The notes under the pieces are model-generated. The model saw nothing but the letters and a program-made list of their open reading frames with translations. It was not told the DNA's origin and made no database searches. A stretch of 64,000 bases of DNA from Macrostomum lignano (taxonomy: Eukaryota): the NCBI GenBank assembly GCA_002269645.1, contig NIVC01001500.1, forward strand, positions 62,001 through 126,000. The letters are read 5' to 3'. Below are positions 12,244 to 41,101 of this stretch, in pieces (position 1 is the stretch's first letter; the number at the start of each line of letters is the position of its first letter). Made by a program: the position numbers and the translations under genes.

Positions 12244-15200
12244 TCAAGAAAGGTCGCAACGATGCTTTTTCTTCCCAGTCTTTCTCTCCACCTGTTTGAT
12301 GGTCGGCTCAGCCGAAGCAGCAGAAGGGGAGCAGTCCACAGTAACAGGAGACCTGCTCTGACCAGCCAGTCTGTACTGACTCATAATTCGATCGATTGCA
12401 ACCGACTCAGACTCAAATTCAATAACATCAGTGGGTTGAATCCAGTTAGCATCGGGCTTGGACTGCTCAAGCATCCAGCGATATTTTCTAGCCTGCTCTA
12501 TGGAGGGCCGGTTGCCTGGCTGCTGGGACATGAGCTCGGCGATCAGTTCCCGGCACGGCTTGCTAACCCAATCTGGCAGGGTGTAGCTACCGGCTGCTAT
12601 GGCCTCGTAGATTTGCAGCACGCTGCGACCCGTGTACGGCACTTGGCCGCTGACCATGAAGTAGAGGCTGACGCCGCAGCAGTACATGTCCAGTTTGCGG
12701 CCGGAAAGCCGCCTGCAACCTGTGGCCACCTGGCGATGAGGGATGACGGATGGGCAGTCAGCTGAGCTGCTCAAGCGGTACACGCTTGTCGTGCGATTCA
12801 CAGCCATGAGGGCCAACCTCCAAAGCGCAGAGAGTGTACATGCCTAACGGTTAGACAGTCAGGGGCCGCTGTACATCCTGTGTGAGCGTGTGCATGAGTG
12901 CTGTGCCTGCGTACAGTATTGGCGCGCTTGTGTGTGCTCAGGAGTCAGTCCCGATGAAAACGGTTACCCAGGCCAAGAAGTGTTGGGCTGCGCCCTTCCA
13001 GTGCGTATGTACTCGTACTTGTGTATCAATTTTGCTTGCCATCCCGCCCCGTCCCCCGTCTCGCTCCCGGGCCAGAGTTTGTGAGAGGCGCAAGTCTCAA
13101 CCCTGGCCTAGCCCTTTGCACCCAGCCCCCGGCCCAACCTCTGTCCAATCTGGGTGCCGACCCTACCCCCTCCCTCGTTGCCCGCCTCACCCTGGGGCTG
13201 CTCGTATTGGCTGGCTGGTTGATAAGCCGGCTGGGCCCCAGGGTTTGGCTCGCCCTCTCCAGTCTGCCCCACTCCTTCCCCCTTTTTTGTGTATTATTTA
13301 AATGCTAGCCCTGAGCGGGCTGCGCTCCACGTTGGTGTCCGCTCGTTGTTCATCTGCACTTTGCTCGTTCGTCTGCATTCTGGTTGTTCGTTCGCTTAAC
13401 TGTTGTGATCGATTGCAATTTGTTCGATTAAACTGTCTGCTCTCGGCCAATAAATACTTCGTTAAATTCCAAGTATCTGACTGGAGAGGTGAGCTCGAGC
13501 TTTCGTTCTTCTGGGTTGCCGCGTGGGGCCGGGATCTGCAGGGACACCTGGGAACGGTGAACTCTCGCCGATCCCAGGGTGTTCGGTCAGGCGAACTCTC
13601 GCCGAACCGAGCGAGACAGGGTAGGAATAGCCGGGGTGAGGGCTGGGACCGGGGTGTCTCAGGCGGGGAGGGCCCGAACCTTGACCCGTCCAGCGGCCAT
13701 TAGGCCGAGACACAACAGAAGCGTCCCAGAGTCACTTGCGTCGCTGCAGATATGCTGTAGGTAACACAGGTAAAGTAGGAAAGCAGTGATTCCTAGATAA
13801 CTCTAAAGCAACAAGATGTCACGGTGCAAGTCACCAAAGAGTCGTCAAACAGTCGCCTAAGAGTCAATTTGAAGCGTTTTATTGTCCGCGACTTTAAAAC
13901 GACTCTGAGACGACGCAAGTGACTCTGGGGTCGTAGAGTCGTACCTGAGGCGTGCTGGGGTCGCTTTAGAGAGAGAGAGAGAGATAAGTGCTTTCGGCGC
14001 CTCAGCCATTGATCAGGCTCTTACGCCACTAGAGATATATAGATTCCAAGTTGGGAGTGTACTAATGTACACTAAGATCCTAATTAGAGCTAAGAGGACT
14101 GTACATCGAGCCGGGCAAGCGGCGCCAGTCAGGCCGAGAGCGGGCCCTACCCCCGACCCTCAGAGCGTACGCCTACCCCAAACCCAATTGGCTTATCTAA
14201 ACCTCCCCGGGGCTGGCAGGGGTTAAGTGAACCTCTGGGGCAGCCCGTGCCTTCTCCTGGGTTAGAAAATGCCAAAAAATGGTCCGAAGACCTCCCCACG
14301 GCCGTGGCCACCCGGAGGAGCCTCCCCACCTACCAGACCCCGGGTACTCATGCCAAGACAGTCTCTTATTTTTGAAGCGGCAGGAGGGCTAATCGCCGGG
14401 ACTATTTCACCCTTTGCTTCGCCAACCCGCCATTTCTATAGTGACCGTGCCAACGGTCTCGTCCTGCTCAGACTCAGTCCTGGTTCTGGCACACTCCAGC
14501 TTTAATAGGGTCGCTGGCTGTTCGCTCAGAGGGCACTCCGAGGGGGACCGTCAGAGCACCAACTGGAACAGGTATAGGCCTGCCTTCCTATACAGCTACC
14601 CACAGCCCTTCCTGATCCACTATTACCCTCCAACCCTACCCAGCCTACTAACTCATTACAAGCTTTCGGCCAGGCAGAGACAAGTTTCACAGGTTAGGCG
14701 CCTCTATGCGAGACAAAACCAGGGGTCGCTTAGAATCACAGAGCTGCGTCTAAAGCGCATCTGCGTCACTTAATGAATCAAAATCGCATTTTGCATTTGT
14801 AACAACTCTATATATTCAACTTGAGTTAGTAGTGCTGTGCTTACACAACGACTGTTGGACGACTTTTCGCAACTATTTTACGATTCTGCAACTCTCACGT
14901 GATGGGCCCGTGACTCAACAGTCGCTAGAGTCACTAGTGAGATGTTTGCAATAACTCTATAGCGATTCTGGTCACGATAACGTGTCCACAGCCTTCCTAC
15001 GAATCATTATTTTATAATAAATCACAGGTCAGGGTTCAGGTAATCACGGATGAGGATTAAGCCCTTTGGACTCGATAGAAATTTGGGATTTTAGGACTAC
15101 ACAAGTGCTAGTTGGCTGGCTACAAAGACTTTATTTTGATACCTCGGGCGGTTGAATAGCGGGCGTGGCCTGACTGCCAGTGATGACGTCATCATCGGCA

Positions 15201-15844
15201 GAATCGGCGGTCGGACCCAGCTCCGACAGCCATTCGCAGACGCCAAAATCGGTTATTTTAATTTCGTGTACTTCTGTCAGCAACAAATTGCCAGGCTTGA
15301 GGTCTTTGTGCACCAGGCGCATGGAGTGCAGGTACTCGACGCCATTTAGTAGTTGGGCAAAATAGCAGCGAGCCTGAGATTCTGGCAGGTGACGGCAGGT
15401 AGGCAACTCGCCGTCTGACGTGTCGCTAAATGATGCAGGATCCAGGCCTTTAGTCTGCAGGTCATGCAGACTGCAGACTGCCCACTCCATCACTAGGTAA
15501 CGCTTTGCACCATCATTAGAAAGAAAATCAGCGAAGAGTTTAGCGACATTTTTATGCTCCAATCGTTTCATTGCATTGGCCTCGCGATCGACATTTTCAA
15601 CTCCGCGCGGCAGTTTTTTTACTAATCTAAGAGTGATGATCTTCACAGCCAATCGGCGCTGGTCGTCAATGTCAACGCAGAGTTTGACTTTGCCATAGGA
15701 GCCTTCGCCTAGCAGGCCGCCAACTAAATAACGATTTAGCAGCAGTTTTGGCACTTTAGTGGCATAAACTATTGGTGGGGCATCCAGCTTGGTTATCAAA
15801 TCATTTAAATTGCATGAGAATGAATCATCAGCCATTGCTTCCAT
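12244..15844 (-). CDS. STK11: STK11/LKB1(PAR-4)-like serine/threonine kinase, 395 aa. Exons 15844-15143 and 12729-12244
   Basis: LLGEGSYGKVK, AVK, HKDLKPGNLLLT, DFG and QPPE are LKB1-type motifs. Donor GAG|gtatca at 15142 and acceptor cgccag|GTG at 12729 give QPPE-VATG...GRKLDMYCCGVSLY, which follows LKB1 QPPEIANG...GFKVDIWSAGVTLY. Divergent, so it may be a paralog. Confidence 0.85.
12790..12950 (+). mobile_element. Headless copy of the same SINE family
   Basis: GCCAACCTCCAAAGCGCAGAGAGTGTACATGCCTAACG...GGCCGCTGTACA..TGTGTGAG aligns to the reverse complement of 19800-19970. Confidence 0.7.
12981..13717 (+). mobile_element. Solo LTR, 737 bp, inside the STK11-like intron
   Basis: Termini TGTTG...CAACA; 4-bp TSD GAAG (12977-12980 and 13718-13721); TATA-like TATTTAAA at about 13295 and AATAAA at 13449-13454. 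Confidence 0.7.
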
Positions 15845-17764
15845 AGTGTGTAAATAATACTGACTTAGGAAAATATAGCTAGCTCATGCAGAAATGATAT
15901 TTGAATACTATTAAATAAAAGTACATATATGCCATTTAGAAGGTAGCTTATTAGATTAAATAATTAAATAAGAGATTTTATTATTATTGTTTTTCGTTTG
16001 TTTCTGTTTCTTACATTTTTGTTTCTTGAAATTATAGGATTAATACAAATTGAGGTTACTACAAATATCTGTTAGACTCTGGCTAGTACTCGTATATTGA
16101 GCATTGTGCAACAGCCATCCAAATCTACAATTGTACAAGTCAAAAGGTAACATTAATAGGATCTATTGCTAAAATGCCAAGTAGCAATTATATTAAAACC
16201 TGAATCCTTTTAAGTTGCTTGGGCTTAGTACCTATAAAAATGCAAACTTCTTAAGGCTTATAATATCACTATATATAGCAGCATATGATATTAAGAGCTA
16301 GATTCATGCAATGCTATATAAGACAGGAAGACACAAACAAAAATACAATTGTGTATATAAAGCAAATGCTACTTTTTAAACCACTTAAGTGCAATTAGCC
16401 CAAACAGACAAGGTAAAAAAATGACTAGTTAGGGGTCTATATACTCATAAATAGACCTAAGTGCAAGGGTATGAGCAAATGGTAAAGACAAGATTAGAAT
16501 AAGGCTTATGATAAACAAAAATGAAGACTAATAAACATACCATGATTGATAGGATAAAGTTTAAAAAATTATAAGCTATATCTCATTCATAATCATTTGA
16601 ACACTTATTGATAGTTGATAGTTCAAAGATATTTGAATAGGCCTACAAACTCTGTGAAAGTCAAATATACATAACAATTATAAACAAAAATGCAACTAGA
16701 AACTTAGTTTTAATTTTAGTCTAAGTCTTAATTTTTAAACATTTAAAATTTTTTATATATTGTAATAAAGTATAGGTTGAGCTTTTAACCAGACAAAATA
16801 TACTATATATAGCATTTGTTAGCTAAGTTTAATAGATAACTCAAAATAAAATCTTGTAATTATGGATGCAAAGCTAACATTTATTGATTTATCAATAATA
16901 GCACTATTGTTTCAATGTAATATTAATAACAGTTAAAATTCTTATAATATTTAATAATAGGATTAGCTAGACTAGCCTAGATATTTGATAGGTGTTCAAT
17001 AATAGTATTTGTGTGGATATGTCATATGTGTTTTTAGTGTAGTCTAGTTTTCTATCTATAGCTTGATAGCTAAATATAGTCATGGAAATTCAATGAAGAA
17101 GAAGAATGAATTATTCTTAAGCAAAGGATTTTTTAAGTTTTTTGTTTTCGTTGATTGTAGCAGTAAGCTTTGGAGAAACACGTACAACTTCAAACAAGAG
17201 CTTCAAAGAAGAGAGCTCGAACTAAATTGTGTCTAAGAAATTTGTGATTTTAATTTCTCGCCGCGTTTTTTCTCCACTGCGGCTCTTCACGACGTTTTTC
17301 GAGCTCAAACATCGATCGATCTTAGAAACAAAATAACTGCTATTCCATAGACCATAACGAGAAATCGGTAGGAACGGTAAAAGCATTGAATTGGCAGAGT
17401 CTGTCTAATCTGCAATTATTTCTTTTCAAAAAAAATTATTTTTTTATTATAGCTACGCAATATAATGACTTTAATTCACTAATTCAGCAAACTAGATGAA
17501 TACAGGATAATACTCGTATAAGATCTCATTTGATCGGTTTCAACCGAATCACTGTTCCGTGGTGTGTGCAGTTTTCACCGCTTGATTAGCGGTGAAGCTT
17601 GATTGTGTTTTTCAAGTGAAATGGCGATTGCAGCCACGACTGCCAGGCACTAAATGTGATATCGTTCAGTTCGATTTGAAAAATTGATTATATCAAGAGT
17701 AAGGCGCAAGAACTTCTGAAGTATTGAATGTATAGACCCTGTTGAGATTTTTTTAATAGAGTTT

Positions 17765-18591
17765 TTTAATGAAACTCGCCAACTGGCGTTACCGGTAAGC
17801 TAAAGAACATCATTTTCCATTCGGACAGCCAAGCTGCCTTGTTCGCCATCAGTGGCTGCAGCAGCAATTCTGCTACAGAATCACCAACAAAATCACCCTC
17901 AAGTGGGTTCCGGGGCATGTGGGGATCCGAGGGAATGAGTTGGCTGACGCCCTTGCGAAAGTTGGCGCCTCTGGCTCCGATCTCTCGGTCCCGAACCCCT
18001 TGTCCCGATTCCTGGCTGTGTCATCGACTCGCGCATCAAAGCGTGGATCAGGACCCCGCACCGCTCGACTTGGGCGAACTGCACCACCTGCAGGCAATCC
18101 AGAGGCGCTGTCCCTCAGCCCTCTCACCAGCTCCGGAAGCTCCTCTTGCGCCTCTTGCGCAGAGACATCCGGGCTGCCACCCTTTCAGGTCACGGCTGCT
18201 TCTCTAGGCACCAGTACCTGCAGGGCAACGCCACCAACGCCATCTGCAGTTTCTGTAACTCAGGTGACGAAACCGCTGAGCATTTCGTCAGCATCTGTCC
18301 CGCCTTTACGCGAGCCAGACTCACTTACCTTGGGCCACACACATCTATTACTGAAGCGTGCAAACCCGAAAACTTAAATCAGCTCATGCGCTACCTCCGG
18401 GCCACCCACAGGGCTGAACTCTCCTTTCCAGAGAGCACTATAGCTGCTGGCGACACTGGGGGACCTCCCTGGGCGGCGCCAACCCTTCGTCCATAGCGAC
18501 GCGTCGGCCGTTCAGGGATTAGCGGAATGGGCGTTCGCGCCTTCCCGCTGTGTCCCCCCGGGACAGCCCTGCAGCTAAGTCAAAGTAAGTC
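17765..18591 (+). mobile_element. 5'-truncated non-LTR retrotransposon 3' end (RNase H plus Cys/His motif; LOA/R1-like, I group)
   Basis: SDSQAALFAI, LKWVPGHVGIRGNELADALAK, then LSGHG...CSFC...ETAEHFVSICP with frameshifts; hairpin-rich 3' UTR; TAAGTCAA repeat tail. Confidence 0.85.
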
Positions 18592-19089
18592 AAGGCGCAA
18601 GCACTTCTGAATTATTGAATATATAGACCCTTCTGGCAGCTATAAATATATAGAGTATGTTGAGATTTTTTAATAGCTAGATCTTGACTATGTACAATAC
18701 TTGACGTATGAATGTACTTGACGTAAATTAGCTCCAGGAAGGTCCCAGAGGGGATTTCTTGTAGAAAATTTTCAGATCATACAAATGTATACAAATGTAT
18801 CTCTGATGAGGGAAAATGAGTAGCATTTTCTTCGAAACCTGTTGAATTGAGTGCAGTTTTACCGAAATAGAACGCAGTTTTACCGAAATAGAACGCAAAA
18901 AGGTGTAGTGACATAGAGTCTAGAGTTGTAAATCACACTGCGTTTTCTCTTGAGACGAAGCGTACGATGGTGCAAAAACTCCACAGAGACTTAAGGCTTC
19001 ACTGTCGGCTTTGACAAGGAGCCCAACGAGCAGTTCAAAGAGCTCTGCACCCGATGCTCAGGGAGCAGAAGTCACTTGACCCAAGCGGA

Positions 19090-19690
19090 AGCGCAGGCAG
19101 AACGTGGTGATTCCGTTTGATACAGTTTTTGGCCGCATACTTTCATCCTAGCTATCCGGATCACATCAACCTGGCGGGCCTAATTGGCTTAGCGCTGGGT
19201 CACGAGATCGGCCACATGTTCCATGAAGAAATGAGAAACCTTCAAGTATCCAATGTTAATGCAGAGACCCTCTGTTCAATTTATCAACAACAACAACAAA
19301 ACCTGAAACAAGTTGGTGCCATGGTTGAGCAAAATTGACCCAAGATATTGTTGATATTAATGGGCACGAAATAGCCTACCAGGCTTTGCAGTGGCTTCGC
19401 AAGGAGAAGAGCAACAGATCGGGAGGCGGATCATCGCCCACGATGGACGTGCCCGATCCCGTGGGTCTGGGACTCTTGCAGGACCAACAGTACTTCGTCG
19501 GCGCTGCCCAGATTTGGTGCCGCAAAACTGATACGCCGAATGCGTAGCCTTCATAAGCGCGACGAGAAGCACAATCAGCAGAGACAGCATCCGGGATGAA
19601 CATGGTGACGATTTTGCCGCGGCGTTCCCGTGTCGACCTGGCGACTGAATGAACCCGATTGAGAAGTGCGACACTGCCTTTCTGATTTGA
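19090..19690 (+). pseudogene. Decayed M13 (neprilysin-family) metallopeptidase C-terminal domain
   Basis: NVVIP..YFHPSYPDHINLAGLIGLALGHEIGH (HExxH), QDIVDING, QQYFVGAAQIWC and DFAAAFPCRPGD*MNPIEKC follow the M13 domain order. Frameshifts near 19115, 19335 and about 19545; in-frame TGA near 19648; no introns seen. Confidence 0.75.
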
Positions 19691-25634: not shown

Positions 25635-26509
25635 AAAGCAACAACAACAACAACAGCAAAAATCCCAGTGACAAAACAACAACAACAACAGGAACAATCC
25701 CAGTGACAACACAACAACAACAACAGGAAAAATCCCAGTGACAAAACAACAACAACAACAGGAACAATCCCAGTGACAAAACAGCAACAACAACAGGAAC
25801 AATCCCAGTGACAAAACAACAACAACAACAGGAACAATCCCAGTGACAAAACAACAACAACAACAGGAACAATCCCAGTGACAAAACAGCAACAACAACA
25901 GGAACAATCCCAGTGACAAAACAGCAACAACAACAGGAACAATCCCAGTGACAAAACAACAACAACAACAGGAACAATCCCAGTGACAAAACAGCAACAA
26001 CAACAGGAACAATCCCAGTGACAAAACAACAACAACAACAGGAACAATCCCAGTGACAAAACAACAACAACAACAGGAACAATCCCAGTGACAAAACAGC
26101 AACAACAACAGGAACAATCCCAGTGACAAAACAACAACAACAACAGGAACAATCCCAGTGACAAAACAACAACAACAACAGGAACAATCCCAGTGACAAA
26201 ACAGCAACAACAACAGGAACAATCCCAGTGACAAAACAGCAACAACAACAGGAACAATCCCAGTGACAAAACAACAACAACAACAGGAACAATCCCAGTG
26301 ACAAAACAGCAACAACAACAGGAACAATCCCAGTGACAAAACAACAACAACAACAGGAACAATCCCAGTGACAAAACAGCAACAACAACAGGAACAATCC
26401 CAGTGACAAAACAGCAACAACAACAGGAACAATCCCAATGACAAAACAACGACAACAACAACAACAACAGCAACAATCCCAATGACAAAACAATAACAAC
26501 AGCAACAGC

Positions 26510-26550
<41 letters not shown>

Positions 26551-26589
26551 AAACAGCAACAATCCCAATGACAAAACAATAACAACAGC

Positions 26590-26621
<32 letters not shown>

Positions 26622-26745
26622 AAACAAAAACAACAATCACAATGACGAAACAGCAGCAACAATCCCAATGACAAAACAACAACAACAACAACAACAACAA
26701 ATATCAAGTATCAACAAATATCACAAATATCAACAACAACAACAG
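25635..26745. repeat. 33-bp CAA-rich minisatellite (CAACAACAACAGGAACAATCCCAGTGACAAAA) grading into (CAA)n
   Basis: More than 20 copies; related units recur at about 27385-27543, 27793-27893 and 32507-32590. Confidence 0.96.
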
Positions 26746-27382
26746 CTTGACCTTGTCGAAGAACAGAGACCTAATCATCTTGACCGACAGTAAGTCCGCC
26801 GTCGTGGCCACTGCGAATGAGAGTTACCAGAACGGGAGCCAATTCAGATTGATCGGCAGACTCAGGAAGGCGAGCGAGTGGTGTAGCATCTCGATACAAT
26901 GGATCCCCGGCCACTGTGGCATCAAGAGTAATGAGAGGGCTGACGAGCCGGCTAAGCAGGCCGCGCAGTTGCCCCAAGGGCAGACGGCTGTCGAGGACGA
27001 GGCGTTGCTCAGGCACTTGAAGCACCGGTGGAGGCCCAGCATAAATGACGCCCGTCTGAGATCAGTGTACGGAGGTGCGATCGAACGCGTCGACTGTGGC
27101 AGAAAAGTGGCTACCATCTTATCGCAGCTTTGATCGGGCCACTGTAAGCTCGCCAAGTATTGGAGACAGAAGGTGGGTCTGGAAGGCGAAGGTGTTTGCG
27201 AGCTATGCGGAGAAATGGAAGATAAAGATCACTGGTGGAAGTGCGCGCGTTGGGATGGTCTCCGTCAGCGTATCGGTTTGATGGAGTTGGAAGACCTCAG
27301 GAAGGAGAACATGGTTCCTAAGAGGTTCCTAAGGGCGGCCCACCCGCAGTGGATTGCCTGATGGTACGGGGCCGAGGACACA
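26746..27382 (+). mobile_element. I-group LINE 3' fragment A (RNase H to 3' end), decayed
   Basis: LTDSKSAV, IQWIPGHCGIKSNERAD, LSQL*SGHC, CELC...HWWKC; flanked by CAA repeats on both sides. Confidence 0.85.
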
Positions 27383-27543
27383 CACAACAACAACAGCAAC
27401 AACAATCCTAATGACAAAAAATAACAAAACAATAACAACAGCAAAAATTCCATTGATTAAACAACAACAGCCCCATTGATAAATCAACAACAACAGCAAA
27501 AATTCCATTGATTAAACAACAACAACAACAACAACATCAGCAA

Positions 27544-27657
27544 CACCCCCTGGGATTTACTCCCAGCCTGCTGGGTAATCAGCAGGCCCTATCCGGCGCC
27601 GCGTCTTTGTCGCGGGGGGGAGGCAACGCCCGTTCTTCGGGCGGCGAAGAGCGCCGG
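27544..27657 (+). ncRNA. HDV-like self-cleaving ribozyme (predicted by manual folding)
   Basis: P1 27544-27550/27614-27620 (6 of 7 bp); P2 CCGGCGC 27593-27599/GCGCCGG 27651-27657; P3 GCG/CGC around L3 TCTTTGT; P1.1 C27605-G27622 and T27606-A27621; GCAA; P4 CGCCCG/CGGGCG; J4/2 GCGAA with catalytic C at 27645. Confidence 0.75.
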
Positions 27658-27792
27658 AAATCGGTCACCGCTCCTGGCTCAGGGGCGGTGGATGTGGCTC
27701 GGTCCGGCCCTCTGTGCTCAGCCTTTGTCGCTGGCTCTGTCAGCGGTAGGGGTTTGGTACCTGGTCCGGTTATTCCGAGCTCGGTCCGCAGT
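27544..27792 (+). mobile_element. Short non-autonomous retroelement B with 5' HDV-like ribozyme and (CAA)n 3' flank
   Basis: 249 bp GC-rich, hairpin-rich segment with no recognisable protein motif, embedded in CAA repeats. Ends TCCGCAGT(CAA)n, like LINE D TCCGCACT(CAA)n. Confidence 0.7.
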
Positions 27793-27893
27793 CAACAACA
27801 ACAACATCAGCAACAATCTCAATGACAAAACAACAACAACAACAACAGCAACAATCTCAATGACAAAACAACAACAACAACAACAGCAACAAT

Positions 27894-28450
27894 TCCGGGC
27901 AGCCGCCGCCGAGGCCGGCATTGCGTGAGCCCGCGAGTGCTCCGTCATCGCCTGGACGGACGGCTCCGCTGAGGAGGGTACCAGCAACGGGGCGGCGCCG
28001 CCGTCATCGAGTTCAGGGACGGTCGCCCCGCGGTCACCGTCCGCGCCGCGGCCGGTGCTCTGTGCAGCAGCTTCCAGGCCGAACTTGTCACGATCCAGAC
28101 CGCCCTGTCCTACTGCCTCCGTGAGGGCCCGGCCCTGCCCCGCAGCATGGCGGTTCTCACTGACAGCCTCAGCGCTCTGACCGCCCTGGAGCAGGGGCCC
28201 GCCCGCCAGTCTACCGCTACCGGTGCGACCTGCTGGCAGCTCATCGCCGGCTCCTCCGGCCGCACTGATTTTCTTTTCTGCTGGGTCCCCGGGCACGCCG
28301 GCATCGATGGCAACACCGCCGCGGGCCTTGCGGCCGCCGAAGCCGCCACTCTCGCGCAAGCGCACAACAGCAACAATCCTATCGTGCACGTGCCTATCAG
28401 CATTAGCTCGGCCCGCGCCGCCATCCGCCGCGATCGCCGCGTCCTCGACG
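27894..28450 (+). mobile_element. I-group LINE RNase H fragment C, decayed
   Basis: WTDGSAEEG / GGAA..AAGALCSSFQAEL..TDSLSAL..WVPGHAGIDGN; TGA at about 27927 and a frameshift at about 27990; the last catalytic Asp is replaced by Gly. Confidence 0.85.
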
Positions 28451-28459
28451 CCCGCATTC

Positions 28460-31400
28460 TCGGCCCACAACGAAATGCACGCGGACGGAAAGAAGGACCT
28501 GCCAATAACAAGGGCCTCAAGGTCCTGCAATGGAATGCGGACGGCATCCGAAACAAAATGGGAGAACTGGAGGAGCTGGTCCAACGCCTCAAAGTTGATG
28601 TTGTCATGATCCAAGAATCTAAGCTTGACCCCGTCTCCCGCACGCCAAAGATCCCCGGCTTTACCACCGTGAGAAAAGACCGACGAACGCTACGTTCCAG
28701 CGAGATGTACAAGGGAGGAGGCCTCCTCACGTTCATCCGCCAAGAAACCCCCTTCCGGCGGCTCAAAGGCTGGAGTGGGGGCACGGTGAAAGGCTGCCGC
28801 ATCGTGATCAACCTTAGCGCCAAACAGCGTCTCGTGCTCACTAACATCTACCGGCCGCCCATCAGGCGCAGTGCTGGCGCCGACTGCCGGGAGCACCCGG
28901 ACATCGATCTCTGGCTGAAGCCGCACCAGTGCGAGATTATTGCTGGCGACTTTAATATCCATCACACGACCTGGGGTAGTCTGCCTGGCCAGGGGCCGAG
29001 GGCGCCGAACAAGCCAAAGCCCTGCTGGAGTGGTGTGACAGTAATGGGTATTGTGTCCTCAACTCGGGCTCCCTCAACCTGTCTCGATCGCCGCGACGGT
29101 GGAGAGAGTGCCCCCGACATCAGCCTCGCTAGCGCTTGGCCTCGACGACCTCTGCTCGTGGAGGCCCTTGACGAACTGGGCTCTGCCCACAAACCCATTC
29201 TCATCACTGTGGATGGCGACCGCGCTAGCACCGACCAGAAGATTTGTCTCGCCTGGGCCTGGCAGAAAGCTGACTGGAACAGCTACCAGGCCCAGCTCGA
29301 AGACGATAGCAATGAGCTCAACAACGGCACTGTCAAGCAGCAAATCCAACGCCTCTGCTTTCGTATGAGTAAGGCGGCCAAAGCTTGCATTCCCATGAAG
29401 CGCGTCTCCTCCAAAAACAAGCCCTACTGGGATTCGGAGCTCTCTAGTCTTCGGGACGAAAGAAACAGACTCAGATCCCGTGGCGGTGACCCGGACGAGT
29501 GGAAGCGCAAGAATGCCGAGCTCAACAGGGCCTGCGCGGAGAAAAAAGCCGCCTTCTGGCAGGAATTTGTGCAGGACCTGTCTAGTTCCTCTGACATCAA
29601 AAAAATGTGGCGTACCATTAAAACCCTAAGTGCTGGAGAGCAACCGACCGCGAAGAACGAAATCCTAGTGGCGGACGGAAAGGAGTGCAGCTCGGATCGC
29701 GACAAAGCAAATGCTTTTGGCCGACACTACGCCAAGATCAGCACCCTCAAGCATGACGCCGCTGACCGCGCCTTCAAAGTTAGCACTGCGAAGCCTTTGA
29801 ATAAGTATCCCACGGGGACCTCCGAGTACGATTGCGCCCTCACCATGGAAGAACTCAAACGAGTCATCTCACACCCCGACGTCACCAAAAAAGCCGGCCC
29901 CGACGGCATCGAAGCGGCTTTCTTCAGACACCTGCCGGACTCGTGGCTCACGGCCTGGCTCACGGTCTTTAATCGGTGCTGGTCCCTAGGGCACTGCCCG
30001 GGAGTCTGGAAGAAGGCGGTTATCGTCCCACTTTTGAAAGAGGGCAAAGACCCAGCCAACTGCAGCAGCTTCCGGCCTGTTAGTCTCACTTCCATCTGTG
30101 TTAAAATCATGGAGCGCATTGTGATGGACCGGCTCATGCACTGGATCGAACTCAACAACACGCTGCAACCGTGGCAAGCTGGTTTTCAGAGAGGGCGTAG
30201 CTGCGAAGAACAAGTGGCGCGTCTGGTCCAGGAAATCCAAGACCACTGGGAACAACGCCCGCCTCGCAAACGATCGCTGTCACCCTTGACTGCTCCCGCG
30301 CCTTCGACCGGGTCTGGCGTACCCGCCTCCTTGCCCGTCTCATGGATGAGGGAGTCCCGGGTCGCATGGTGCACTGGTTTGCCAGCTTCCTGGAGGGGCG
30401 CCAGATTGCCGTCCGCGTGGGCGATACGATTGGCAAATGGAGGCCGCTTAAGGAGGGGGTGCCGCAGGGGGCAGTGTGCTCGCCGGTGCTCTTCCTCCTG
30501 TACATCAATGACTGGGCGGACTCCCTGGTCCCAGATGTCAACTACGCCGGCTTTGCTGACGACCTGGGCGTCTGGGCCTCGGGCAACAACATCCAGCAGA
30601 TTGCGGAGCGCCTTCAACTGGCCATCGATCGCATCGACGCCTGGGCCACAGATCTCCGTATCGATCTCAATCCCCTCAAAACTGAATGCTGGATCTTCTC
30701 GAGAGACCGCAGGGACCGCGACCGTACCCTCAACCTGTGCATCCGAGGCCAGCAACTCCCAACCAGGCAGGAGCTGCTCTACCTGGGTGCCTGGATCGAC
30801 AGCGGCCTGCTCTTCAAGCGGCAGTCCGACGAAGTTGCCGCCAAACTGCGCCGTCGTTGTGCTGTCCTGCGTGCACTGTCGCATCGCGAATGGGGGTGGG
30901 ACCGCGCCACGCTTAGGACGGTGTATAAAGCCGTGGTGGAGTCTGTGGTTTGGCATGCGGCTGTAGCCTGGATGCCCTGGCTCTCCCAGACTCGCCTCAA
31001 TGACCTGGACAGAGCCCAAAAAGTGGCTCTGAGACTTGTCTCTGGTCTACCAAGCTCGACTCCTAGCGTGGCCATCTACCGTGAGGCCGATTGTGTGCCC
31101 ATCAGCCTGGAGGCCAAACGACGAGCGCTGGTCGCCGTCGAAAAGGCGCTCCGGCGGTCCGAGGCGGACCCCTGGAGGTCCAGGTGTGAACTCAGGACCC
31201 CCACCCGGCTCAAAGCCAACCGTGGCCTCCGCGAACAAGCTCACTCAGTGCTCAACGAGATCCTCCCACACAGCCGTCTCCCGGAAGCCTGGGTCAGAGC
31301 CCCGCCGTGGGACACGCTCAGCGGCTCGGACCGGCTGAGGCTCTATCCGTAACTGGTGAGACCGCTCCGTAAATCCGACAGTCAGATCACCCGCGATCCG

Positions 31401-32506
31401 ATCATCGCCGACACCTTCCGAGAACGCCTGCCCAGTACCTGCTACTTCACGGACGGCTCCGCTTCGGGTGGCACCGCCAACGGCGGCGCCGCCTGGATCC
31501 TGTTTGACCAGGGGCCTTTTCATATTACCAATTCCAGAACCAAAATCGGTTCGGAATTCCAAGAAAAACAGCAGTATAACTATTTAACTCTGTTAATATT
31601 TGACTGCCTTAACAACCTAACTTAGCACAATTTTTCACTTTCTTCTTGGCGATTGTCATTCAATAATAAAAACGTTATAGCACGTATCTCCCTCTAGTTA
31701 TGGAGACAAAAAGTTATACTTCACAAATTGGTTCTGGTTCTGGAACCAGAACAAGCAATATGAAAAGGCCCCAGGAGACGGGCACGATCATCCAGGGCGG
31801 CTACTCTGCAGCGGGCAGATGGTGCAGCTCCTTCGAAACCGAGCTCCGCGCGCTCCGAGATGCCGTCGTGGATGTCATCCAGCAGGACGTTGACACCGCC
31901 GCCCTCCTCACCGATAGCCAGGCGGCCGTCAGAGCTCTGATAGCCGACCGGCCCACCACTAACGCGCTACTCGAAGACCTGAAGGCCCTTCTTCGGCAAG
32001 CAGCTGGCCGTTGCGTTCTCACGATCCAGTGGATTCCCGGCCATGCTGGCGTGGCTGGTAACGAGTTCGTCGATCGCGAGGCCAAAGCCGCAGCTCTTCT
32101 GGATCAAGCCCAAGTGGCCATCTCGCTCGAAGCAGCCAAGCGGTTTATCTACCGCCGTCTCGAGTACCTTCCGGACCTGACCGGCCATCTGAAGGAGACT
32201 TACCAAGGACGCATCACGCACCATAACGGCAGCCGGCGTGAGCAAGTCCTCGTTGCGCAGATGAGAGCTGGACACTGCCCCTCCTCGGCCTATTACGCTA
32301 AGCGCATCGGCAAAGCTCAGCTGGCCGAGTGCAGGCTTTGCGGGCTCGAGGTAGACCAATTCCACCTGGTCCACTGCCCTGCGATCGATGTCGCCCGAAG
32401 ACAGAACAACATTTGCGATCTGAAAGACCTAGCCGATGGGAACCTGGTGGCGCGGCTCCTGGAGTGGATCGAATGGACCCCGCTCTAGGCGGCTGCACTC
32501 CGCACT
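28460..32506 (+). mobile_element. Near full-length Ingi-like (I group) non-LTR retrotransposon D: APE endonuclease, RT, RNase H, C-terminal Cys/His motif; disrupted
   Basis: EN: VLQWNADG, IQESKL, GGGL, GDFNIHH, PDISLA, SAHKPI. RT: GPDGI, FRPVSLTS, QAGF, GVPQGAVCSP, FADD, YLG. RNH: FTDGS, TEL, TDSQ, WIPGHAGVAGNEFVD. Also QMRAGHC and CRLC..H..C. Frameshift at about 30268, TAA at 31350, MITE insertion 31512-31771; 3' end in (CAA)n. Confidence 0.92.
31512..31771. mobile_element. PIF/Harbinger-type MITE, 260 bp
   Basis: Perfect 15-bp TIRs GGGCCTTTTCATATT (31512-31526) and AATATGAAAAGGCCC (31757-31771); CAG duplicated on both sides. Removal restores the LINE frame (WILFDQ-ETGTIIQ). Confidence 0.85.
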
Positions 32507-33364
32507 CAACAACAACAACAACAACAACAGCAACAATCCCAATGACAAAACAACAACAACAACAACAGCAACAATCGCAATGACAACAAACTGCAACAAA
32601 TAATCAACAATATAAAATTTGGACAATCTATAAAAGCACGGGCTAAAAGCTCTTACTCATGCTACTATACATTAAATAGGAAGTTAGTCCAGCTTTCACG
32701 GAAATCTGTAGTTTCCAACAGCCTATCCGGGAAAAGATATAAATTCTATAAATATTCATCATTCTATCAGCTATAAAAAAGTGCAAACTGACTGACCCAA
32801 CCACAGGCAGATCCCCAACCTCAAAGTTTCAGGCGAATCTCGAAATTTCTCCAACCCGCTGTGTCTCTGCGTGTGTGCTCTCCTCATTCTCTCATCCCAC
32901 TGGCACATTTGTCTCACTCATGGATGGAGGCCCTCGACTGTCACCAGAGGCTGGGGGAGGGCTGTGCTTCAAGCTCTCTTATGCTCTCCCCTAGGGGATA
33001 TAGTGGAGCAGCAGTGGAAAAAAAATTAAAGAGAAATTCTAGGGAATGAAGGCTCTTTGGAAGCGCCACTGTGGCACACACAGGGTGAGCCATGGCTATG
33101 ACGGCAATGACTGTGATGAGATTTCAGAGACGGACAAAGATTGCGAGTCTCTACGGGCCTCATCTATTTGCAGAATAATACTATATCTACAGATTTTATA
33201 TTGGTGTTGTACATGTAAATGAGAGGGCAATAGAATGTTTGTCATACAGATGTGTGCCTGCCACATGAACTATTCATCACACGACATCGCAAAACAAAAT
33301 CTATTATCTAAGTCGACTCTAGAGGCTCTGATGTTCTTTTTCTGGGCAAATCCCAGTTTCTTGT

Positions 33365-36667: not shown

Positions 36668-41101
<4,434 letters not shown>

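What the first reader, a model, noticed from the sequence alone, without database searches (positions are those of the whole stretch)
25635..32590. Four I-group retroelement pieces stacked in one (CAA)n minisatellite: probable microsatellite-targeted insertion
Seen: fragments A (26746-27382), B (27544-27792), C (27894-28450) and D (28460-32506) are all in the same orientation. A, B and C each start in CAA repeats, and A, B and D end in them. The spacers retain the complex 33-bp unit (CAACAGCAACAATCCC/CTCAATGACAAAA), so the array predates the insertions and is not merely a set of element tails. The three RNase H domains differ in sequence, indicating independent families or insertions. Established: some APE-type LINEs are microsatellite-specific (Waldo, Mino, Koshi/Kibi). 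Inference: an Ingi-like lineage with (CAA)n specificity, using these arrays as safe-harbour landing sites.
Basis: partly seen in the sequence, partly recalled or inferred. Interest (0 to 1): 0.78.

Follow-up and report, generated by a model that had tools for sequence, protein, structure and literature searches.

The report
LINE insertions stacked in CAA minisatellite
Three separate insertions of retrotransposons that carry (CAA)n tails sit in the CAA tracts of one older minisatellite, so this animal LINE lineage seems to prefer CAA-repeat sites, a known kind of behaviour with a new target.

Summary
A 35-38 bp CAA-rich minisatellite (25635-32590) carries four same-strand retroelement pieces. 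A is a 5'-truncated RNase H/CCHC end. C is an internal RNase H fragment. D is a decayed endonuclease-RT-RNase H element. The three RNase H domains are only 33-36% identical.

Two corrections. B (27546-27792) is not a coding fragment. It is a complete 247-nt non-coding retroposon whose first 112 nt read as an HDV-like ribozyme, with P1 starting at B's first base. C lacks its own 3' end and is fused to D's truncated 5' end, so there were probably three insertion events, not four.

B is flanked by a 23-bp duplication containing an array variant (CATCAG) found nowhere else in the window. The array therefore predates B.

Relatives from other genomes (30-50% identical) carry (CAA)n or (CAC)n(AAC)n tails. 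In three of them a full-length 5' end directly follows a CAA-type run ending in CAG. One relative has no CAA at its 5' flank.

Best reading: a preference for CAA…CAG sites, driven by pairing between the RNA tail and the target, and not shown to be strict specificity. Ingi-clade membership could not be decided. This is a new member of a known kind.

The parts
25635..26745 (+). Upstream part of the CAA-rich minisatellite. It has 23.7 homogeneous 35-bp units, then degenerate units with (CAA) runs of up to about 15 repeats.
   Evidence: TRF; motif scans (0 expected by chance).
26746..27384 (+). Element A: the 5'-truncated 3' end of an I-group LINE. It holds the C-terminal half of RNase H and a CCHC-type Cys/His motif (from 27197). 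There is one in-frame TGA at 27131-27133 and a short 3' UTR.
   Evidence: Pfam RNase_H E 8.4e-07; alignment; stop codon.
27385..27545 (+). Array spacer between A and B, made of divergent units. It includes a possible 3' TSD copy for A (CAACAACAACAG at 27385-27396, with the 5' copy at 26734-26745) and the 5' TSD copy of B (27523-27545).
   Evidence: The A duplication is not diagnostic because the same string recurs in the array.
27546..27792 (+). Element B: a complete 247-nt non-coding retroposon, highly structured. Its 3' end, CCGAGCTCGGTCCGCAGT, resembles the 3' UTR ends of LINE relatives (L008, L003).
   Evidence: Fold z-score -4.36; 3' end comparison; TSD.
27546..27657 (+). Probable HDV-like self-cleaving ribozyme. 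P1 27546-27551 pairs with the G run at 27614-27620. A structured J1/2 insert spans 27553-27592. P2 27593-27599 pairs with 27651-27657. P3 is 27601-03/27611-13, with L3 TCTTTGT. GGCAAC is at 27622-27. P4 is 27628-42. GGCGAA is at 27643-48, with the candidate catalytic C at 27645.
   Evidence: Rfam RF02682, 30 bits, E 0.018 over 8.5 kb and 0.14 over the window, below gathering 44. Coordinates. MFE folds recover P1, P3 and P4, or alternatively P2.
27793..27893 (+). Array spacer of 2.7 units of 38 bp. Its first 23 bp (27793-27815) are the 3' TSD copy of B, carrying the unique CATCAG variant.
   Evidence: TRF.
27894..28460 (+). Fragment C: an internal piece of a third LINE family, truncated at both 5' and 3' ends. 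It holds a whole RNase H domain with one frameshift near 27990. It carries a unique in-frame 24-nt insert (28363-28386) whose first 19 nt match the array unit. It joins D with no tail in between.
   Evidence: Pfam RNase_H E 2.7e-06; alignment.
28461..32506 (+). Element D: APE endonuclease (from 28516), RT, RNase H and CCHC (from 32330), with an 18-nt 3' UTR. It is 5'-truncated just upstream of EN, so it lacks the 2A and PHD regions seen in relatives. It is decayed by frameshifts, one stop codon and a MITE.
   Evidence: Pfam; frame analysis; relatives.
31512..31771 (.). A 260-bp MITE inserted in D's RNase H domain. It has 15-bp perfect TIRs (GGGCCTTTTCATATT) and a 3-bp TSD (CAG). Removing it restores the reading frame.
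   Evidence: the repeat finder; translation.
32507..32590 (+). D's (CAA)7 tail or target copy, followed by the last two array units. Unique sequence begins after about 32615.

Best explanation
A pre-existing 35-38 bp minisatellite, in which each unit holds a (CAA)n-CAG tract, received three independent target-primed reverse-transcription insertions, all in the CAA-sense orientation.

(1) A is a 5'-truncated LINE.
(2) B is a full-length short non-autonomous element. Its 5' end was set by an HDV-like ribozyme, and its 3' end mimics that of the LINEs.
(3) C+D is a 5'-truncated LINE (D) whose cDNA jumped onto the RNA of another LINE family (C) before joining the target.

The elements belong to an I-group lineage with APE, RT, RNase H and CCHC domains. 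In relatives this is a single ORF with an N-terminal 2A peptide and PHD fingers. The RNAs end in (CAA)n.

Inferred mechanism: the endonuclease nicks the TTG strand, and the RNA's CAA tail pairs with the nicked (TTG)n to prime cDNA synthesis. That fixes the orientation and favours CAA…CAG sites. The second-strand cut falls 0-10 nt past the CAG.

Shown: the domains, the orientation, B's duplication, and the tails and 5' junctions of relatives.
Inferred: the nick positions, the tail-target pairing, the template jump, and ribozyme activity.
For: - Domains and strand.
- The only CAA array in 64 kb holds every CAA-tailed element found there. The one other LINE fragment in the window (17.8 kb) has a different tail and lies outside the array.
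- B's 23-bp duplication carries a variant that occurs only twice in the window.
- All three empty sites rebuild an in-phase unit.
- Tails in relatives: L001 (CAA)6, L003 (CAA)n, L004/L014/L084 (CAC)n(AAC)n.
- 5' junctions in relatives:
  - L010: a unique AT-rich flank, then (AAC)7ACAG, then a full-length element.
  - L009: the second element starts right after the first element's tail, CACCACAACAACAG.
  - L087: a host HTH_32-like ORF is cut at profile position 49 of 73, exactly at CAACAACATCAACAG.
- Ribozyme. Published precedent says cleavage falls at the first nucleotide of P1 and that structured J1/2 domains occur (PMC4908430). HDV-like ribozymes sit at the 5' ends of L1Tc/ingi and R2 (PMC3185411, PMC4035085).
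Against: - Only one locus from this genome could be examined. No other copies of A, B, C or D were available, and the nearest protein in the databases is 64% identical.
- The duplications for A and C+D consist of strings that recur in the array, so they are not diagnostic.
- L001 is a CAA-tailed relative with no CAA at its 5' flank and unrelated 3' flank.
- The ribozyme scores below Rfam's gathering threshold. It rests on a single sequence, so no covariation can be counted, and nothing similar was found in relatives.
- The 5' boundaries of L084, L004 and L006 are uncertain.
- The C/D junction could also arise from D inserting into C followed by a deletion.
Confidence: 0.6

Rival explanations
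1. Strict sequence specificity. The lineage's endonuclease recognises (CAA)n or an AACAG motif, and nearly all copies sit in such repeats, as with Waldo, Mino, Kibi and Koshi.
For: The AACAG string recurs at tail ends or 5' junctions in the window (A) and in L008, L009, L010, L084 and L087. There are three events in one array.
Against: L001 lacks CAA at its 5' flank. L004's tail is followed by an unrelated flank, and its possible target has only AACAAC. L087's target is a 15-nt imperfect stretch inside an ORF, not a microsatellite. No census of the source genome was possible.
Confidence: 0.2
2. No targeting. The elements insert at random, the CAA at each 5' side is just the tail of the upstream neighbour, and the stack reflects chance or relaxed selection in a repeat-rich, tolerated region.
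For: (CAA)n is an intrinsic tail. The region is packed with neutral repeats.
Against: The spacers contain complex units, not pure tails. B's duplication contains unit sequence with a unique variant. More than 30 other arrays in the window carry no LINE insert. Three events fall in about 2% of the window, all in one orientation. Relatives L010 and L087 have host-derived CAA runs at their 5' junctions.
Confidence: 0.1
3. The array was born from tails. The minisatellite itself grew from an early element's (CAA)n-CAG tail and nearby sequence, and later copies simply inserted into earlier tails (self-targeting).
For: Head-to-tail stacking occurs in L009. Tails in relatives also end in CAG. C carries a 19-nt array-like string inside its ORF.
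Against: No element in the window ends in the unit's AATGACAAAA part. The 1.1 kb upstream of A holds 27 or more units with no element body. Apparent unit-like strings after the tails of relatives proved to be the next element's 5' end (L009) or are too short to judge.
Confidence: 0.1

Closest known systems
Microsatellite-specific APE-type LINEs (Waldo (ACAY)n and Mino (AC)n in the R1 clade; Kibi (TC)n and Koshi (TTC)n in the Tx1 clade; Kojima & Fujiwara 2004, cited in PMC4640811 and PMC3706591)
   Same: Insertion into a simple repeat in a fixed orientation. The element's 3' end matches the target repeat. Flanking duplications are made of repeat sequence.
   Different: The target motif is different (CAA…CAG), and the element type is different: an RNase H-bearing I-group element whose relatives have 2A and PHD regions. 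The specificity looks looser. Genome-wide specificity has not been shown.
Ingi/L1Tc with RIME/NARTc (trypanosomatid Ingi clade)
   Same: Relatives have a single ORF with an N-terminal 2A peptide (PMC3708506) and an RNase H domain. An HDV-like ribozyme sits at the 5' end and is shared with a short non-autonomous partner (PMC3185411, PMC4035085).
   Different: The tail is (CAA)n and not poly(A). PHD fingers are present. The host is a metazoan. RT similarity does not separate Ingi from Nimbus. The ribozyme has been seen only in the short element B, not yet in a LINE.
R2 SIDEs and R2 template-jump chimeras (PMC3414825)
   Same: B consists of a 5' ribozyme plus a LINE-like 3' end, which is the SIDE design. 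C+D looks like foreign RNA copied onto the 5' end of a LINE cDNA by a template jump.
   Different: R2 uses a restriction-like endonuclease and targets 28S rDNA. Here the endonuclease is APE-type and the target is a CAA tract.
I factor and other I-group LINEs with trinucleotide tails, such as (TAA)n
   Same: APE-RT-RNase H-CCHC layout and a simple trinucleotide 3' tail.
   Different: The tail motif differs. The I factor has a separate ORF1 and no reported ribozyme or 2A peptide (from my own knowledge, not checked here).

Membership tests
I-group non-LTR retrotransposons (Ingi, I, Nimb, Loa, R1, Tad1, Loner, Outcast; PMC4640811) | APE-type endonuclease N-terminal to RT | tested here: met
   D: Exo_endo_phos E 9.8e-10, RVT_1 E 2.8e-19.
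I-group non-LTR retrotransposons | RNase H domain downstream of RT | tested here: met
   RNase_H hits in A, C and D; aligned with relatives.
I-group non-LTR retrotransposons | C-terminal CCHC-type Cys/His motif | tested here: met
   CRLCGLEVDQFHLVHC in D and CELCGEMEDKDHWWKC in A, conserved in relatives.
Ingi clade | RT groups with Ingi/L1Tc in a phylogeny | tested here: inconclusive
   No labelled reference set was available. D's RT is 30-36% identical to two Elysia sequences from a data set that is mostly Ingi, and 32% identical to a Nimbus reference.
Ingi clade | Single ORF with an N-terminal 2A-like peptide | tested here: inconclusive
   GD(V/I)ExNPGP is present in relatives L004, L006, L010, L084, L086 and L087. 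D is 5'-truncated, so the feature cannot be seen in the window.
Microsatellite-specific LINEs | Most genomic copies lie in one repeat type and in one orientation | not testable with these tools
   The source genome is not in any searchable collection. Only this locus (three events) and scattered relatives were available.
Microsatellite-specific LINEs | Target duplication made of repeat sequence, with the 3' end matching the repeat | tested here: met
   B's 23-bp duplication; CAA tails in relatives.
HDV-like ribozyme | Nested double pseudoknot (P1, P1.1, P2, P3, P4) with a catalytic C in J4/2 | tested here: met
   All helices and the GGCAAC and GGCGAA core strings can be placed. P2 is 7/7 Watson-Crick pairs and is not scored by the Rfam model.
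HDV-like ribozyme | Reaches the Rfam gathering score | tested here: not met
   30 bits against 44 for RF02682. The model's P1 is replaced here by a distal P1 across a 40-nt J1/2 insert.
HDV-like ribozyme | Covariation and self-cleavage | not testable with these tools
   There is only one sequence. No homologue was found in the 114 loci fetched.
SIDE/RIME-type non-autonomous partner | Shares both the 5' and 3' ends with an autonomous LINE | tested here: inconclusive
   The 3' motif CCGAG…CCGCAGT is shared with L008 and L003, and loosely with D. No full-length LINE 5' end from this genome exists for comparison.

The most novel reading that the evidence does not exclude
A widespread I-group LINE lineage of marine invertebrates is truly sequence-specific for (CAA)n-CAG sites. 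It frees its RNA from read-through transcripts with a 5' HDV-like ribozyme that has a large J1/2 domain, and it mobilises a ribozyme-plus-3'-end SIDE-like partner. That would be the first CAA-targeting LINE, and the first pairing of a ribozyme with microsatellite targeting outside rDNA elements.
Probability: 0.35. Interest if true: 0.6.

Novelty: new member of a known kind. Interest (0 to 1): 0.5.

Why it matters
If the preference is real, it adds a new target (CAA…CAG) and a new clade to the short list of repeat-targeting LINEs. It also provides a natural case in which tail-target pairing, a 5' ribozyme and a non-autonomous partner can be studied together. More broadly, it illustrates how minisatellites grow into composite repeat islands. 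It would not change current understanding of how LINEs work.

Tried and rejected
1. Other copies in the window: blastn found none. tblastn found only an unrelated RNase H LINE end at 17.8 kb.
2. Source genome: the RT search gave at most 64% identity (Macrostomum lignano). A host MCTP-like ORF gave only 37-38% identity to molluscs and 34% to M. lignano. The host is therefore an unidentified metazoan and no census was possible.
3. Ribozymes in relatives: permissive Rfam scans of 22 loci found nothing. My own HDV descriptor found B, but it has a background of about 1.45 hits per shuffled window, so it adds little.
4. Viral contigs: no relatives.
5. Clade assignment: the PDB search returned only L1 and R2. 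Gastropod supplement sequences did not separate Ingi from Nimbus. The 2A paper's RT set is not held.
6. The idea that the array unit (CAATGACA) is conserved after the tails of relatives: rejected. In L009 the post-tail sequence is the next element's 5' end, and the other matches are very short.
7. An HDV-like reading of the 5' ends of L006, L010 and L087: they show hairpins only, with no canonical core.
Full report
**What is there.** The region 25635-32590 is the only CAA-rich array in the 64-kb window.
- TRF reports a 35-bp unit (AACAACAACAACAACAGGAACAATCCCAGTGACAA) x23.7 at 25640-26467 with 96% matches. Degenerate units follow, then 38-bp units at 27793-27893 and 32511-32586.
- The 23-nt core of the unit occurs 31 times, always on the + strand and only inside this region. 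Shuffles give 0 expected.
- (CAA)6 runs occur nowhere else in the window.
- The window as a whole is an animal gene region crowded with more than 30 unrelated mini- and microsatellites.

**The inserts**.
- A (26746-~27384) encodes the C-terminal half of an RNase H domain and a CCHC-type motif. It has a single in-frame TGA.
- C (27894-~28460) is a whole RNase H domain of another family with one frameshift. Homology to relatives stops about 90 codons before their C-termini.
- D begins just upstream of its APE endonuclease (LKVLQWNADG at 28516). It runs through RT, RNase H and CCHC to an 18-nt 3' UTR ending at 32506.
- D is dead. It has an out-of-frame stretch in EN, a frameshift near 30270, a TAA at 31350-31352, and a 260-bp MITE at 31512-31771.
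- The three RNase H domains share 33-36% identity.
- All pieces are on the + strand.

**B is something else.** B (27546-27792) has no coding potential and folds very stably (z = -4.36).
- A permissive Rfam scan gives one non-repeat hit in the whole window. It is an HDV-like ribozyme (RF02682, 30 bits; E 0.018 for the 8.5-kb region and 0.14 for the window; gathering score 44) at 27588-27658.
- Read by hand, every element of the fold can be placed:
  - P3 GCG/CGC with L3 UCUUUGU
  - a G7 P1' strand
  - GGCAAC
  - a P4 hairpin
  - GGCGAA, with the candidate catalytic C at 27645
  - a perfect 7-bp P2 (CCGGCGC/GCGCCGG), which the covariance model does not score
- The best P1 partner for the G run is CCCCCU at 27546-27551, the very first bases of B. 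It is separated from P2 by a 40-nt J1/2 insert that forms two hairpins.
- MFE folding of whole B recovers this P1, together with P3 and P4. Folding of the first 115 nt recovers P2.
- HDV-like ribozymes cleave at the first nucleotide of P1, and large structured J1/2 domains are known (PMC4908430).
- Such ribozymes define the 5' ends of R2 and of L1Tc/ingi RNAs and their short partners (PMC3185411, PMC4035085).
- B's 3' end (CCGAGCTCGGTCCGCAGT + CAA) resembles the 3' UTR ends of LINE relatives L008 and L003, and loosely that of D.
- B is therefore best read as a complete SIDE- or NARTc-like non-autonomous element (PMC3414825).
- This rests on one sequence. There is no covariation, and no homologue was found in relatives.

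**The array came first, at least for B.**
- B is flanked by CAACAACAACAACATCAGCAACA at 27523-27545 and at 27793-27815.
- The CATCAGCAACA variant occurs only at these two places in the window. This is a target-site duplication made of unit sequence.
- Deleting B plus one copy rebuilds a normal unit.
- The same in-phase restoration holds for A (CAACAACAACAG on both sides) and for C+D taken together ((CAA)5CAGCAACAAT on both sides). Those strings recur elsewhere in the array, so they are only consistent with duplication and not diagnostic.

**C and D probably arrived together.**
- C is truncated at both ends, lacks a tail, and abuts D's truncated 5' end.
- No remainder of C follows D.
- A template jump of the reverse transcriptase from D RNA onto C-family RNA explains this in one event. 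Such jumps are documented in vivo (PMC3414825).
- The alternative, D inserting into C followed by a deletion, is not excluded.

**Relatives elsewhere.** The D RT finds relatives at 30-64% identity. The best named hit is from Macrostomum lignano, and the rest come from marine and sand metagenomes.
- Contigs were fetched.
- Their 3' ends carry intrinsic trinucleotide tails:
  - L001: (CAA)6, then an unrelated flank
  - L003: (CAA)n
  - L004, L014 and L084: (CAC)n(AAC)n
  - L008 and L009: tails ending in CACAACAACAG
- Full-length relatives have one ORF with a 2A-like peptide, PHD fingers, APE, RT, RNase H and CCHC.
- Where a full-length 5' end can be placed, it follows a CAA-type run ending in CAG:
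  - L010: unique AT-rich DNA, then (AAC)7ACAG, then the element.
  - L009: a second element starts directly after the first one's tail.
  - L087: a host HTH_32-like ORF is cut at profile position 49 of 73, exactly at CAACAACATCAACAG.
- L084's contig starts with AACAACAG, but the element boundary there is uncertain.
- L001 is a counter-example. It is 5'-truncated and has no CAA at its 5' flank.

**Interpretation.**
- The tail is a lineage trait, so CAA after an element proves nothing by itself.
- Four observations together favour a real insertion preference for CAA…CAG sites:
  - unit-containing spacers
  - B's duplication
  - three same-orientation events in about 2% of the window
  - host-derived CAA runs at 5' junctions in three other genomes
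- The most likely mechanism is pairing of the RNA's CAA tail with the nicked TTG strand, possibly helped by endonuclease preference.
- Strict microsatellite specificity is not shown, and L001 and L087 argue against it.
- Clade: I group is established. Ingi versus Nimbus is unresolved.
- The host is an unidentified metazoan.

**Verdict.** The locus is real and correctly described. The case is a new member of the known class of repeat-targeting LINEs, with a probable ribozyme-headed partner as a bonus.

Noticed in passing
window 31512-31771: A 260-bp AT-rich MITE sits inside D's RNase H domain. It has 15-bp perfect inverted ends (GGGCCTTTTCATATT) and a 3-bp duplication (CAG). Removing it restores the reading frame (…FDQ|ETG…).
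   Followed up: partly
window 28363-28386: Fragment C has an in-frame 24-nt insert (CACAACAGCAACAATCCTATCGTG, 8 aa) that is absent from seven homologues. Its first 19 nt match the surrounding minisatellite unit. Possible causes are a templated repair patch or a template switch. It remains unexplained.
   Followed up: partly
window 17790-18590: An unrelated 5'-truncated LINE 3' end (RNase H plus a Cys/His motif) ends in TAAGTCAAAG-type repeats and not in CAA. It is flanked by imperfect direct repeats of about 45-60 bp (about 17701-17760 and 18594-18690), which is unusually long for a target duplication.
   Followed up: no
window 1-64000: More than 30 different mini- and microsatellite arrays (periods 4-46 bp, up to 2.9 kb) lie between long intron-poor host ORFs. 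These include a kinase-like ORF at 12244-15844 (-) and an MCTP-like ORF at 36668-41101 (-). The best protein identity to any database species is only 37-38%.
   Followed up: partly
window 19170-19240: A short ORF fragment contains a zinc-metalloprotease HExxH motif (…GHEIGHMFHEE…), followed by a short CAACAACAACAACAA run. It may be an exon or a pseudogene piece.
   Followed up: no
L087 1-545; L087-L114 generally: Contigs deposited as bacterial or archaeal MAGs (for example an 'uncultured Granulosicoccaceae' bin) carry animal-type LINEs and a eukaryotic HTH_32/DUF4817-like ORF. This indicates host contamination in those bins.
   Followed up: partly
L086 1-80 and 4545-4905: A more distant relative has a (GTC)12 run at its 5' side and roughly 100-bp tandem repeats containing CGTCGTC after its 3' end. 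Other sublineages may prefer other repeats.
   Followed up: no
L009 4125-4900: Two elements of the lineage lie head to tail. The second begins immediately after the first one's CACCACAACAACAG tail.
   Followed up: partly
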